Source: Oikopleura dioica
Taxonomy: Eukaryota > Animalia > Chordata
DNA length: 64,000 nt
NCBI GenBank assembly: GCA_907165135.1
Contig: OU015567.1
Span: 4,030,001 to 4,094,000 of the forward strand
Direction of reading: 5' to 3'
In this document: in pieces, positions 50,577 through 52,204 of the stretch
Layout: the number at the start of each line of letters is the position of its first letter
Numbering within the stretch: the stretch's first letter is position 1
Position numbers and translations under genes: made by a program
The notes under the pieces: generated by a model
The model's input: the letters and a program-made list of their open reading frames with translations, nothing else
Told to the model about the DNA's origin: nothing
Databases searched by the model: none

Positions 50577-52204
50577 CTAGCAATTGTACTCCTTTCTAGA
50601 GGCATCCCAGGCATTGATGACCTTATTCCAGTTGCCATAGCCTCGAGAGGGCTTCTGACAAACGCTGTCGAAAATGGTCGCTCCATCATAATATGTTTTG
50701 GAGAAGGATTCGACGGACATGAAGTTGTCAGCTAAAATTGAAATGAAATTTTCCAACGGATTTCAGAAAAGGTCTACCTGAGGATTGTTTTTGGCCAATC
50801 TCATTTTTTTGCTCGTAAACCCACGAATAGTTGTTGTTTTCGGGCCCGTTAATTATGGTTAAAGATAAGTCGGTCCGTTAAAATTACAGTTAACTTTTGT
50901 AAGAGGACTTTTGACCAGTCCCTGTGTAACAAAATGCATGCCAGTAAAACTCTGGAATATCGATTATATTCTTTGTTGATGCAGGCCTATAGTTCATTGA
51001 CCCGTACAATCCATAAGTTCCAACAATGATCCAAACATATTCATCTTCTATTTCTCGTTCCATGAATTCCCTGACCATGCATTCGAGCTGATTCCAAGCC
51101 CCCTTGTTGAAATCGCCGAATTGTGGGCTGACATTGGTGAGGGTGAAGGTAGAGTTGGCTGCATCTTTCACTTGGTTAAGCAGGGCATTTGGCATCAGAT
51201 GGCCCCGGTCGATGCTTAAGTCTTGAGTGTTCCCCTTGTAGTCTTCGTCCTGAGTTGGTATCATAAATAATAACAAGTAATAAAGATGCACCTGTGGTTG
51301 CCATCAATCACACTCATTAGGACTCTTAACTTCGTCAAGATTGCAATAAAAAGAGGTGTCAGATGGAGGAGTGTTAGTTCCGCAAAGACCCTTGCACATC
51401 TTAAGCCAAACTGACTTAGGTCTTGGCTTGGGACCGCTGTTGGCAGGTATGAATTTGTCAGGTCTGGGGTAGGATTTTCCATTCTTCGTTCGGCTATTTT
51501 TACGATAATAAAGAGCCGGAAATGGGAAAATAGGGGGTTCACCTTATCTTGATGGCGGAGTAGACAGGCAAGTTAGTGTCCGTGTTGAATAGTGTAGCGA
51601 AGTAGTGATCTTTCCCATAGTTATTTTGACAGAGTCTTTATTGTGGTTAAGGACAAATATGATTGAGTAAAGTAACCTTCTTATACAAGTTAACTTGTTA
51701 AAACACTTTCAACACGCTTCCTGACTGTTTTACCACTTTGAGCTCCGACAAGCATATTTTGAAGAGGCCATTCTGCACCAGGTCTGAAATAATCGGGACC
51801 ACAGTTCACTGGGGTTTGCAAGCTGCTTTCTGCAGAAACTTTGTCCTGCTTTTCATTCCTAGTTACAGCTGGCATCCCATTTTCAACACAGTTACTTTGA
51901 CTCTCCCTCGTATTGTGTTTTTCTTTACAGTCATTTAGCAAATCGAACAATCTATCGCCTTGTTCCTCATCGTCAACAACCTCATACGCCTCATTTGCGT
52001 TACAGTCCTCCTCAATGCACTCTCGCTCCCAATTACCGTCTTTGAGTTCTTCCATAAACCCCCAGGCTCGTCGAGTTCTGCTCAAAAATGCATTTGCTTC
52101 TTGACTTTCAGCGAGAAAAGAGCTCGCTGCTACGCTTGTCAGGATTACGGTTGAAAGTTTCTAAGGGCCCGTAAAAGAAAAATAGTAAAAACTGACCTTA
52201 CCAT
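50577..52204 (-). CDS. Secreted Gla-domain + DNA/RNA non-specific endonuclease (ENDOD1-like) fusion; possible in-frame TGA
   Basis: M|[12 protein letters not shown] signal; propeptide [17 protein letters not shown]; Gla domain [22 protein letters not shown]. Nuclease motifs: CGPDYF...R|LCQ...YFATLFNTDTNLPVYSA, DEDY...DRGHLMP, TFTLTNVSPQFGDFNKGAWNQLE, IPEFYWHAFC. Confidence 0.85.

What the first reader, a model, noticed from the sequence alone, without database searches (positions are those of the whole stretch)
50577..52204. Vitamin-K-dependent Gla domain fused to a secreted DNA/RNA endonuclease
Seen: signal peptide, a propeptide with Ala-10, Leu-6, Phe-17 and RxRR, and a Gla domain (EE..[12 protein letters not shown]..EAYE). 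The start of a nuclease domain (CGPDYF) lies in the same uninterrupted exon as the Gla domain. Later exons carry FATL..PVYSA, an intact catalytic DRGH and TNVSPQ..FN..W..LE. Known: this propeptide pattern is the gamma-glutamyl carboxylase recognition signal, Gla domains bind Ca2+/phosphatidylserine, and DRGH marks His-Me finger nucleases (Endonuclease_NS, ENDOD1). Gla domains are known on proteases, Gas6/protein S, PRRG proteins and some ascidian proteins; I know of no Gla-nuclease fusion. Inference: a vitamin-K-controlled extracellular nuclease targeted to PS-exposing membranes, debris or mineral surfaces, in an animal without a clotting cascade.
Basis: partly seen in the sequence, partly recalled or inferred. 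Interest (0 to 1): 0.9.

Follow-up and report, generated by a model that had tools for sequence, protein, structure and literature searches.

The report
Gla-tagged secreted nuclease gene, apparently broken
In the Okinawan Oikopleura dioica genome a vitamin-K-type Gla module really has been spliced onto a secreted DNA/RNA nuclease, a combination I found nowhere else, but in this assembly the gene carries a premature stop and a lost splice site (and its second copy is plainly dead), so it is most likely a recently inactivated evolutionary experiment rather than a working enzyme.

Summary
On the minus strand (ATG 52204, stop 50577) one uninterrupted exon encodes a signal peptide, a factor-X-like carboxylase propeptide (Phe-17, Ala-10, Leu-6, RTRR), a Gla domain (Pfam 38 bits, cut-off 27) and the first motif of an Endonuclease_NS nuclease. 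Later exons carry intact DRGH and TNVSPQ..N..W..LE (Pfam 78 bits).

The window is O. dioica OKI2018_I69 chr2. The deposited annotation splits the locus into three genes, because the reading frame cannot be closed:
- An in-frame TGA (51306-51304) sits at a conserved R/K/H codon.
- The acceptor AG of the intron before the exon for a core beta-strand is gone.

A duplicate of the fusion on the PAR is an obvious pseudogene. The closest Bergen nuclease and ten further larvacean relatives have a plain signal peptide and no Gla. None of the 150 best nuclease relatives in 1.8 billion proteins carries a Gla motif.

The Gla cassette is a copy of the 5' end of the adjacent Gla-TSP1 gene. dN/dS of about 0.2 between the two fusion copies indicates that the chimera was once under selection.

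Verdict: a real, lineage-specific, apparently unique architecture, probably recently inactivated. RNA joins and carboxylation could not be tested.

The parts
52202..52204 (-). Start codon, forming a 3-nt first coding exon (ATG|GTAAGG)
   Evidence: Sequence. The same ATG-plus-GT arrangement is conserved in the PAR copy and in the neighbouring Gla-TSP1 gene.
52161..52201 (-). Intron 1, 41 nt, GT-AG
   Evidence: Conserved in the PAR copy.
51721..52160 (-). Second coding exon (e2), one ORF. With the ATG it holds the signal peptide (52160 to about 52119), the propeptide F16-R32 (52118-52068), the Gla domain A33-F73 (52067-51945), a linker (51944-51816) and the nuclease N-terminus QTPVNCGPDYFRPGAEWPLQ..GKTV (51815-51721).
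51636..51720 (-). Intron 2, 85 nt, non-canonical GA-AG
   Evidence: It is the only join that gives ..GKTVR|LCQNNYGK, as found in Bergen P0163 and in P0004. The deposited model P0159 uses it exactly.
51543..51635 (-). Third coding exon (e3): LCQNNYGKDHYFATLFNTDTNLPVYSAIKI
51292..51493 (-). Fourth coding exon (e4). The ancestral donor is CAG|GTGCAT at 51292/51291. The exon holds the conserved ..NECD-x-WQPQ segment.
   Evidence: Family alignment: C(D/G/H)(R/K/H/L)(Y/W/H)Q(P/A) is coding in P0163, P0156 and P0004. The 42-nt GT-AG intron 51291-51250 follows.
51304..51306 (-). In-frame TGA stop inside the fourth coding exon
   Evidence: The PAR copy has AAA (K), Bergen has R and L002 has H at this codon. 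The deposited model P0159 ends here.
50917..51249 (-). Fifth coding exon (e5), the catalytic core: DRGH (51210-51199), TNVSPQ (N at 51135-51133), ..AWNQLE (E at 51084-51082)
   Evidence: Pfam Endonuclease_NS 77.6 bits. Identical to the deposited 124-aa model P0001.
50872..50916 (-). Remnant of intron 5: three in-frame TAA codons and no acceptor AG. The window's CCGACT replaces the TAAAGA/CAAAGA that carries the acceptor in the PAR copy and in L002. The local direct repeat TTAACGGACCGA / TTAACGGGCCCGA suggests the site was overwritten by a copy of downstream sequence.
50778..50871 (-). Sixth coding exon (e6): ..SLTIINGPENNNYSWVYEQKNEIGQKQSS. It encodes a core beta-strand.
   Evidence: Open and conserved at the protein level in four sequences. 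The equivalent strand is residues 246-254 in the P0156 model, pLDDT 93.5.
50577..50731 (-). Seventh coding exon (e7): DNFMSVESFSKTYYDGATIFDSVCQKPS...EYNC plus the TAG stop. It follows a 46-nt GT-AG intron (50777-50732).
   Evidence: Homologous to the C-termini of P0004, P0156 and P0010.
49227..50342 (-). Neighbouring Gla-TSP1-Ig-like gene (deposited 295-aa model). Its 5' cassette is the source or sister of the fusion's Gla cassette.

Best explanation
This is a lineage-specific chimeric gene of Okinawan Oikopleura dioica.

How it arose (shown): a duplicated 5' cassette of the adjacent Gla-TSP1 gene replaced the signal peptide of a secreted nuclease of the Serratia/EndoG type (Endonuclease_NS). 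The cassette comprises about 130 nt of upstream sequence, the ATG micro-exon, the signal peptide, the gamma-carboxylase recognition propeptide, an RTRR furin-type site, the Gla domain, and about 10 codons of the next exon with the intron missing.

What the intact product would do (inferred from the families): it would be secreted, gamma-carboxylated on about 8 canonical Glu residues, and cleaved after RTRR. Its Ca2+-loaded Gla domain would tether it to anionic (phosphatidylserine-rich) membranes or mineral. There its Mg2+-dependent His-Me-finger centre (DRGH, Asn of TNVSPQ, Glu of NQLE) would cut DNA or RNA.

Its history (shown and inferred): the chimera predates a segmental duplication to the PAR. 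It evolved under purifying selection afterwards, so it was probably functional.

Its present state (shown): in the reference genome both copies are damaged. The PAR copy is damaged many times over. This chr2 copy has a nonsense codon in the fourth coding exon (e4) and has lost the acceptor of intron 5. From the start codon the reading frame yields only a 241-aa Gla protein that lacks the catalytic centre. The locus is therefore most likely a recently inactivated gene, or an inactive allele.
For: - Architecture: a single ORF covers the Gla domain and the nuclease N-terminus. Pfam finds Gla and Endonuclease_NS above their cut-offs. Factor X propeptide+Gla matches at E 1.4e-10.
- Origin: the cassette is 76.5% identical at the protein level to the neighbour's. 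Similarity reaches about 130 nt upstream of the ATG. The linker QSNCVENGMPA matches QRKCVENGLQP of the neighbour's next exon.
- Gain rather than loss: Bergen P0163 is the closest nuclease (100/100 clade). It begins MKLSLAAFLGQAAAQYVPGQNPVNCGSSYF and has no Gla domain. Ten other larvacean relatives also have only PF01223.
- Past selection: window against the PAR copy over 261 nuclease codons gives dS 0.50, dN 0.094, ratio 0.19. Cassette against the neighbour's cassette gives 0.14.
- Lesions here: TGA at 51306-04 where relatives have K, R or H. The acceptor AAAG|ATATCT of the PAR copy and L002 is replaced, with no AG over 80 nt.
- Annotation: the RNA-hinted annotation splits the locus into models of 205, 124 and 110 aa (PMC8008620).
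- PAR copy lesions: a 760-bp MITE in the signal peptide, a 5-nt deletion at RR|AW, a TGA in the Gla domain, a 33-nt deletion that removes D-R of DRGH, and a 1-nt deletion.
- Similar branch counts: S20/N19 for this copy and S23/N21 for the dead PAR copy.
Against: - Apart from the two lesions, all about 428 codons are open. All 8 family cysteines and all catalytic residues are kept. Exons e6 and e7 remain intact, so any inactivation is very recent or incomplete.
- The assembly paper reports a 1.3% mismatch between the polishing reads and the assembly (PMC8008620). The single TGA could therefore be an error or a heterozygous variant.
- An in-frame GTTAAG donor at 51330 could skip the stop. Splicing e5 directly to e7 would be GT-AG and in frame.
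- O. dioica uses about 11% non-canonical introns.
- I could not check DNA or RNA reads of the Okinawan lineage.
Confidence: 0.6

Rival explanations
1. The gene is intact and functional in the animal, producing a vitamin-K-dependent, Gla-tagged secreted nuclease. On this view the TGA is an assembly error, a heterozygous variant, or is skipped through the upstream GTTAAG donor. Intron 5 would be removed by non-canonical splicing.
For: - The dN/dS ratio is low.
- All catalytic residues and cysteines are retained, and the downstream exons are open.
- A GA-AG intron is already used in this very gene.
- The assembly paper reports a 1.3% read-to-assembly mismatch and 11% non-canonical introns.
Against: - The acceptor loss is a 6-nt replacement, not a single-base change. 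No AG remains within 80 nt.
- I recall that O. dioica non-canonical introns still end in AG. This is from memory (Denoeud 2010) and was not checked here.
- Skipping the stop would delete a conserved Cys-containing segment present in all relatives.
- Skipping exon e6 would remove a core beta-strand.
- The RNA-hinted annotation did not join the parts.
- The clearly dead PAR copy shows the same branch-specific N/S counts.
Confidence: 0.2
2. The functional product is the truncated 241-aa protein. It would comprise the signal peptide, propeptide, Gla domain and a non-catalytic N-terminal third of the nuclease fold, acting as a small secreted Gla protein.
For: - The ORF from ATG 52204 to the TGA is open and matches the deposited model g5010 plus the signal exon.
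- The GA-AG intron in that model suggests RNA-seq intron support. This is an inference from how AUGUSTUS treats non-GT-AG sites; it is based and my own knowledge.
Against: - The fragment would carry unpaired cysteines and half of a beta-sheet.
- The stop lies upstream of at least two exon junctions.
- The downstream nuclease exons are still conserved, so the truncation is recent rather than an adapted state.
Confidence: 0.1
3. The Gla part and the nuclease part are separate, independently transcribed genes that merely lie next to each other, as the three deposited models would suggest.
For: The deposited annotation lists a Gla gene (205 aa), a nuclease gene (124 aa) and a 110-aa gene.
Against: - The Gla domain and the nuclease N-terminal motifs (VNCGPDYFRPGAEWPLQ, LCQNNYGKDHYFATLF, PVYSA) lie in one ORF and one deposited model.
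- The 124-aa model starts at an ATG inside intron 4.
- The 110-aa model is in a frame with no homologue, whereas the other frame matches the family C-terminus.
Confidence: 0.05

Closest known systems
Vertebrate vitamin-K-dependent proteins (factor X, IX, VII, prothrombin, protein C; PRRG proteins): propeptide plus Gla module
   Same: - A signal peptide and a propeptide with Ala-10 and Leu-6, then a basic cleavage site.
- F4/M5/L8 hydrophobic tip residues.
- Glu at positions 6, 7, 14, 16, 19, 20, 26 and 29.
- Cys17-Cys22.
- Factor X propeptide+Gla matches at E 1.4e-10; Pfam Gla 38 bits.
   Different: - The aromatic residue sits at -17, with Leu at -16.
- Positions 25, 32 and 39 are N, D and R rather than Glu.
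- The module is followed by a nuclease, not by EGF, kringle or a transmembrane segment.
- Carboxylation was not shown.
Neighbouring O. dioica Gla-TSP1-Ig-like gene (window 50342-49227; PAR paralogue P0160; Bergen P0161)
   Same: The same 5' cassette: ATG micro-exon, signal peptide, propeptide, Gla domain. It is 76.5% identical over 81 aa, and similarity extends upstream of the ATG and into the next exon.
   Different: The downstream modules are thrombospondin type 1 and Ig-like. An intron follows ..KKKYPAT that the fusion lacks.
Larvacean secreted Endonuclease_NS family (Bergen O. dioica 'Endonuclease' P0163 and P0156; P0004 and relatives)
   Same: - 63% identity to P0163 from QTPVNCG onwards, and a 100/100 clade with it.
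- The same exon content, cysteines, DRGH and TN..PQ motifs, and C-terminal ..C..-end.
   Different: Those proteins start with a plain signal peptide directly before ..PVNCG. None has a Gla domain.
Serratia nuclease / EndoG / EXOG (beta-beta-alpha-Me, His-Me finger nucleases)
   Same: - Family member P0156 matches Serratia nuclease 1ql0/1g8t at E 2.5e-10, and also matches EXOG and EndoG.
- DRGH is present in this gene. I take the His as general base and a conserved Asn as Mg2+ ligand from memory of the family; neither role was checked here.
   Different: This is an animal secreted form with 4 predicted disulfides and an extra N-terminal C..YF..P..LCQ module. It resembles ENDOD1-like proteins only weakly (Atlas TM 0.36) and has no ENDOD1_C domain.

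Membership tests
Gla domain (PF00594) vitamin-K-dependent module | Profile match above the curated threshold | tested here: met
   38.3 bits against a cut-off of 27. 37.8 bits for the deposited model P0159.
Gla domain (PF00594) vitamin-K-dependent module | N-terminal signal peptide, then a carboxylase-recognition propeptide (aromatic -16, Ala -10, Leu -6) ending in a basic cleavage site | tested here: met
   [20 protein letters not shown] aligns with the factor X propeptide in 9bvl_P. Ala-10, Leu-6 and RTRR are present. Phe is at -17 and Leu at -16, a one-residue offset. The signal peptide was judged by eye only; no predictor was run.
Gla domain (PF00594) vitamin-K-dependent module | Conserved Glu positions, the ExxxExC motif, the Cys17-Cys22 pair and the hydrophobic omega-loop residues | tested here: met
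   E6, 7, 14, 16, 19, 20, 26 and 29; C17 and C22; F4, M5 and L8.
Gla domain (PF00594) vitamin-K-dependent module | Glu residues actually gamma-carboxylated; carboxylase and VKOR present in the organism | not tested
   - No query sequence for the carboxylase could be referenced.
- No paper links Oikopleura to the carboxylase.
- Indirect evidence only: the neighbour's cassette is conserved between the Okinawa and Bergen lineages.
Endonuclease_NS (PF01223) His-Me finger nuclease | Profile match above the curated threshold | tested here: met
   77.6 bits against a cut-off of 23, E 1.5e-21, for the fifth coding exon alone.
Endonuclease_NS (PF01223) His-Me finger nuclease | Catalytic DRGH and the downstream conserved Asn and Glu. 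I take their roles (His as base, Asn as metal ligand) from memory of the family. | tested here: met
   IDRGH at 51210-51199; TNVSPQ; AWNQLE. Invariant columns G149, N172, Q176 and E189, and nearly invariant H150, in the family alignment.
Endonuclease_NS (PF01223) His-Me finger nuclease | The complete fold encoded by one continuous, spliceable reading frame | tested here: not met
   An in-frame TGA at 51306-04, and no AG acceptor for the exon that encodes core strand 246-254 of the family model.
ENDOD1 (vertebrate endonuclease domain-containing 1) | NUC domain plus the ENDOD1_C region and a C-terminal membrane segment | tested here: not met
   No Pfam hit on the last exon. Only weak structural resemblance, TM 0.36. 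The protein ends ..EYNC like the larvacean secreted family.

The most novel reading that the evidence does not exclude
The chr2 gene, or an intact allele of it in Okinawan or other Pacific O. dioica populations, is expressed as a full-length Gla-nuclease. That would be the first nuclease whose location is set by vitamin-K-dependent gamma-carboxylation. It would be tethered by Ca2+ to phosphatidylserine-exposing membranes, debris or mineral, in an animal with no clotting cascade.
Probability: 0.2. Interest if true: 0.75.

Novelty: new variant of a known kind. Interest (0 to 1): 0.45.

Why it matters
Gla domains are known on a handful of partners: proteases, Gas6/protein S, PRRG proteins and small matrix proteins. 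A Gla-nuclease would extend vitamin-K-dependent targeting to nucleic-acid degradation.

Even as a dying gene, the locus is a clean, datable example of domain shuffling:
- The donor cassette sits 0.3 kb away.
- The recipient's signal peptide was replaced almost exactly.
- The chimera was kept under selection and duplicated to another chromosome.
- Both copies are now at different stages of decay.

It also suggests that in Oikopleura the signal-propeptide-Gla cassette behaves as a portable module. Other first-stage notes report Gla cassettes on ZP and PLA2-like partners in this genome; I did not check them.

Finally, the locus shows how non-canonical introns and lesions fragment gene models in this species.

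Tried and rejected
**RNA reads**
- The four RNA runs offered carry the same species label but match only 90-95% on the neighbouring expressed gene. They come from another cryptic lineage.
- They put almost nothing on this gene: depth 0.2-0.3 over 50914-51215 only. No joint could be read.
- The single read-laying run was then spent, so DNA reads could not be checked either.

**Gene models tried**
- A strictly GT-AG model fails at e2/e3. No phase-2 GT donor exists, and only the GA-AG join fits the homologues.
- It also fails at e5/e6.
- I enumerated every in-frame excision starting at the GT donors 50908 and 50894, and at the GG/GT donor at 50916/50915. None ends in AG.
- An AT-AC or AG-AC reading (50895-50848) is in frame, but I know of no precedent in this species.
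- The alternative frame of the last exons (the deposited 110-aa model, 50804-50426) has no homologue and was rejected. The frame that matches P0004, P0010 and P0156 was kept.

**Other checks that led nowhere**
- I first took L001 for an ortholog from another lineage. It is a paralogue on the PAR of the same assembly.
- TTAACGGGCCCG is not a repeat family in the window.
- The Atlas search by features gave nothing usable.
- Literature searches for a Gla-nuclease, or for a carboxylase in Oikopleura, returned nothing.
- Kulman et al. 2006 on Ciona Gla proteins is not held.
- A full-length spliced protein could not be sent to the search or fold tools because it has no reference. Pieces and deposited models were used instead.
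Full report
**What is there**

The gene lies on the minus strand. An ATG at 52204-52202 is followed directly by a 41-nt GT-AG intron. Next comes a 440-nt exon (52160-51721) that reads without interruption through six elements:
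- a hydrophobic signal sequence ([18 protein letters not shown]);
- a propeptide (..[18 protein letters not shown]);
- a Gla domain ([41 protein letters not shown]);
- a 43-residue linker;
- QTPVNCGPDYFRPGAEWPLQNMLVGAQSGKTV, the N-terminal motif of a secreted nuclease family.

The following exons are:
- e3: 51635-51543 (LCQNNYGKDHYFATLF..PVYSAIKI);
- e4: 51493-51292;
- e5: 51249-50917, with IDRGH, TNVSPQ and AWNQLE;
- e6: about 50871-50778 (..NNNYSWVYEQKNE..);
- e7: 50731-50577, ending in TAG.

**Domain evidence**

Pfam gives Gla at 38.3 bits (cut-off 27) for the first large exon. It gives Endonuclease_NS at 77.6 bits (cut-off 23, E 1.5e-21) for e5 alone.

Against solved structures the best match of the first 80 residues is 9bvl_P, a factor X propeptide+Gla peptide, at E 1.4e-10. 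The alignment runs from the propeptide (..[12 protein letters not shown] against ..EQANNILARVTR) through the Gla domain. The following are in place:
- Ala-10, Leu-6 and the RTRR site;
- Glu 6, 7, 14, 16, 19, 20, 26 and 29;
- Cys17 and Cys22;
- the F4/M5/L8 tip.

A close intact family member, P0156, matches Serratia nuclease at E 2.5e-10 and also EXOG and EndoG. With a 42-sequence alignment it folds with mean pLDDT 93.5.

**Where the window comes from, and how it is annotated**

The window is O. dioica OKI2018_I69 chromosome 2 (GCA_907165135.1, OU015567.1). The deposited annotation places three genes on this locus:
- **g5010 (P0159, 205 aa, Pfam Gla).** It begins at the internal Met of MEELKDG and ends at the TGA at 51306-04.
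- **A 124-aa model (P0001, Endonuclease_NS).** It starts at an ATG inside intron 4.
- **A 110-aa model** in a frame without homologues.

My joins reproduce P0159 letter for letter. They include an 85-nt non-canonical GA-AG intron (51720-51636) and a 49-nt GT-AG intron. The GA-AG join is independently supported by relatives that read ..GKTVRLCQNNYGK (Bergen P0163) and ..GDTVRLCQNRY (P0004). The annotation used AUGUSTUS with RNA-seq hints (PMC8008620). The non-canonical intron therefore probably had read support; this is an inference.

**Why the frame does not close**

1. **The TGA at 51306-04.** In e4 the segment ..SPNECD-TGA-WQPQ|DEDYKGNT corresponds to:
   - ..GNCDRYQPQDNDYLGNN in Bergen P0163;
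   - ..ETCHNWQPIDEDYLGNN in P0156;
   - ..EFCGLHQAIDEDYKGNT in P0004.

   The PAR paralogue has AAA at this codon. The stop therefore lies in conserved coding sequence, 14 nt before the ancestral donor CAG|GTGCAT. A 42-nt GT-AG intron follows. An in-frame GTTAAG at 51330 could bypass the stop, but that would delete 13 residues, including one of the eight family cysteines.
2. **The lost acceptor of intron 5.** Between ..FCYTGT and ..SLTIINGPENNNYSWVY lie three in-frame TAA codons.
   - In the PAR copy and in an environmental relative (L002), an intron ends at AAAG|ATATCT.
   - In Bergen a 36-nt GT-AG intron fits.
   - In this window the six bases that carry the acceptor are replaced (CCGACT for TAAAGA), apparently by a copy of the nearby TTAACGGGCCCGA.
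   - No AG remains between 50893 and 50813.

   The exon that can no longer be joined encodes the strand equivalent to residues 246-254 (SYSWVYYQE) of the P0156 model. That strand pairs with the ..YWKAFCY strand in the core sheet. Splicing e5 directly to e7 would be GT-AG and in frame, but would drop this strand.

From the start codon the open frame gives 241 residues: signal peptide, propeptide, Gla domain, linker and one third of the nuclease, without DRGH.

**Relatives**

- **The PAR copy (L001).** The same assembly holds a second copy of the whole pair (Gla-nuclease plus Gla-TSP1) on the PAR (OU015568.1). Its fusion gene is clearly dead. It has a 760-bp MITE with inverted ends in the signal-peptide exon, a 5-nt deletion at the RR|AW site, a TGA in the Gla domain, 11-nt and 33-nt deletions (the latter removes ..YKGNTQDLSIDR, leaving DWGH), and a 1-nt deletion in e5. 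The fusion therefore predates that duplication.
- **The Bergen nuclease (P0163, L004).** It is the closest nuclease, forming a 100/100 clade with this gene and sharing 63% identity from QTPVNCG onwards. It begins with a plain signal peptide immediately before ..QNPVNCGSSYF and has no Gla exon. An environmental contig (P0162, L005) shows the same arrangement in a single ORF.
- **The wider family.** A search with the full-length relative P0004 (candidate lengths 177-563 aa) returned ten larvacean nucleases, all with PF01223 only. Among the 150 best matches to e5 in 1.84 billion representative proteins, none has the EC.EE.C Gla signature. Gain of the Gla cassette in the Okinawan lineage is the parsimonious reading.

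**Origin of the cassette**

The next gene downstream on this strand (50342-49227, deposited 295-aa model) starts with the same architecture. It has ATG|GTAGGC, a short intron, and then [62 protein letters not shown].. It is 76.5% identical to the fusion's cassette over 81 residues.

DNA similarity extends about 130 nt upstream of the ATG (shared ..CAAATAATCAGAC..). It also extends beyond the Gla exon. The fusion's linker ..QSNCVENGMPA.. equals ..QRKCVENGLQP.. at the start of the neighbour's next exon, but without the intervening intron. The breakpoint on the nuclease side falls within a few residues of where the Bergen protein's signal peptide ends.

**Selection**

Nei-Gojobori estimates:

| Comparison | Codons | dS | dN | dN/dS |
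|---|---|---|---|---|
| Window vs PAR copy, nuclease part | 261 | 0.50 | 0.094 | 0.19 |
| Window vs PAR copy, Gla part | 97 | 0.17 | 0.074 | 0.44 |
| Window vs Bergen, nuclease part | 276 | 1.2 | 0.21 | 0.17 |
| Fusion cassette vs neighbour cassette | 70 | 0.79 | 0.11 | 0.14 |

The Gla-part comparison rests on few changes, and its low dS hints at conversion between the copies.

Substitutions were polarised with Bergen and L002 as outgroups. That gives 20 synonymous and 19 non-synonymous changes on this copy's branch, and 23 and 21 on the PAR branch. Both ratios are far below the roughly 3:1 non-synonymous to synonymous ratio I assume for neutral evolution; I did not compute that figure.

The chimera was therefore under purifying selection for most of the time since the duplication, and the lesions are recent. 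The counts do not distinguish this copy from the certainly dead one.

**How it would work**

The following steps are inferred from the families, not shown:
1. The signal peptide takes the product into the secretory path.
2. The propeptide docks the gamma-glutamyl carboxylase, which converts the clustered Glu residues.
3. A furin-type protease cuts after RTRR.
4. The Ca2+-loaded Gla domain inserts its F4/M5/L8 tip into anionic membranes or binds mineral.
5. The linked His-Me-finger nuclease then degrades DNA or RNA at that surface.

Given the size of the larvacean secreted nuclease family, the ancestral role is plausibly digestive or clearing. This is speculation.

**What could not be tested**

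- The RNA runs offered come from a divergent lineage: 90-95% identity on the neighbouring Romo1-like gene, where the reads also show the spliced leader. They left the Gla-nuclease essentially uncovered, so exon joins and expression are unresolved.
- The assembly paper reports a 1.3% mismatch between the polishing reads and the assembly. The single TGA might therefore be an error or a heterozygous variant. The 6-nt acceptor replacement is much less likely to be either.
- The presence of a carboxylase gene was not tested, and no literature on it was found.

**Verdict**

- The architecture is real and, as far as these searches reach, unique.
- The functional reading is only partly supported. The most likely state is a recently inactivated chimeric gene (0.6).
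- A live Gla-nuclease is the main rival (0.2).

A first-stage note of this scan (s1-409245) had already described the shared cassette on this same stretch. I tested that reading and it holds.

Noticed in passing
window 49227-50342 (-): A Gla-TSP1-Ig-like gene (deposited 295-aa model) lies next to the fusion. It has the same ATG micro-exon, signal peptide, propeptide and Gla domain. Bergen (P0161) and the PAR (P0160) have counterparts. TSP1-type Pfam hits on P0161 are below threshold (24 and 18 bits). This looks like a conserved vitamin-K-type protein of larvaceans.
   Followed up: partly
window 52118-52066 vs 50253-50201 (-), approximate: The propeptide-coding stretch (..TTTCTCGCTGA.AGTCAAGAAGCAAATGCATTTTTGAGCAGAACTCGACGAGC) matches at 52 of 53 bases between the two paralogous cassettes. 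Elsewhere the cassettes differ at about half of their synonymous sites. This could be a short gene-conversion tract or a constraint at the nucleotide level.
   Followed up: no
L001:4553-5310 (PAR copy, same assembly): A 760-bp insertion with inverted ends AGAGTTCGAAATCT / AGATTTCGGACTCT and internal GGGAGCTCCC palindromes sits in the signal-peptide exon of the PAR copy. It looks like a MITE.
   Followed up: no
window 52424-52876 (-): A Romo1-like gene is well expressed in the RNA runs. The loose ends of reads at 52802 are the reverse complement of what I recall as the O. dioica spliced leader (..TTTTTGAGTCCGATTTCGATTGTCTAAC; from memory, not checked), so the gene appears to be trans-spliced there. 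The reads are only 90-95% identical, and 31 other letters replace 52596-52671. The runs therefore come from another cryptic species under the same label.
   Followed up: partly
window 51636-51720 (-): An 85-nt GA-AG intron with an internal palindrome (AACAAGTTAACTTGTT-like). The deposited model uses it and the homologues require it. In the PAR copy the donor has changed to AA.
   Followed up: partly
window 50426-50804 (-): The deposited 110-aa gene model is in a frame that has no homologue and overlaps the true last exons of the nuclease. It is probably a spurious ab initio call caused by the broken frame.
   Followed up: partly
window 52205-52230 (-): ..CCCATTTCAG|CTCATTTAAGAGATCATG lies 17 nt upstream of the start codon and is conserved in the PAR copy. 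It is a candidate spliced-leader acceptor. The gene lies only about 220 nt downstream of the Romo1-like gene on the same strand, so the two may form an operon.
   Followed up: no
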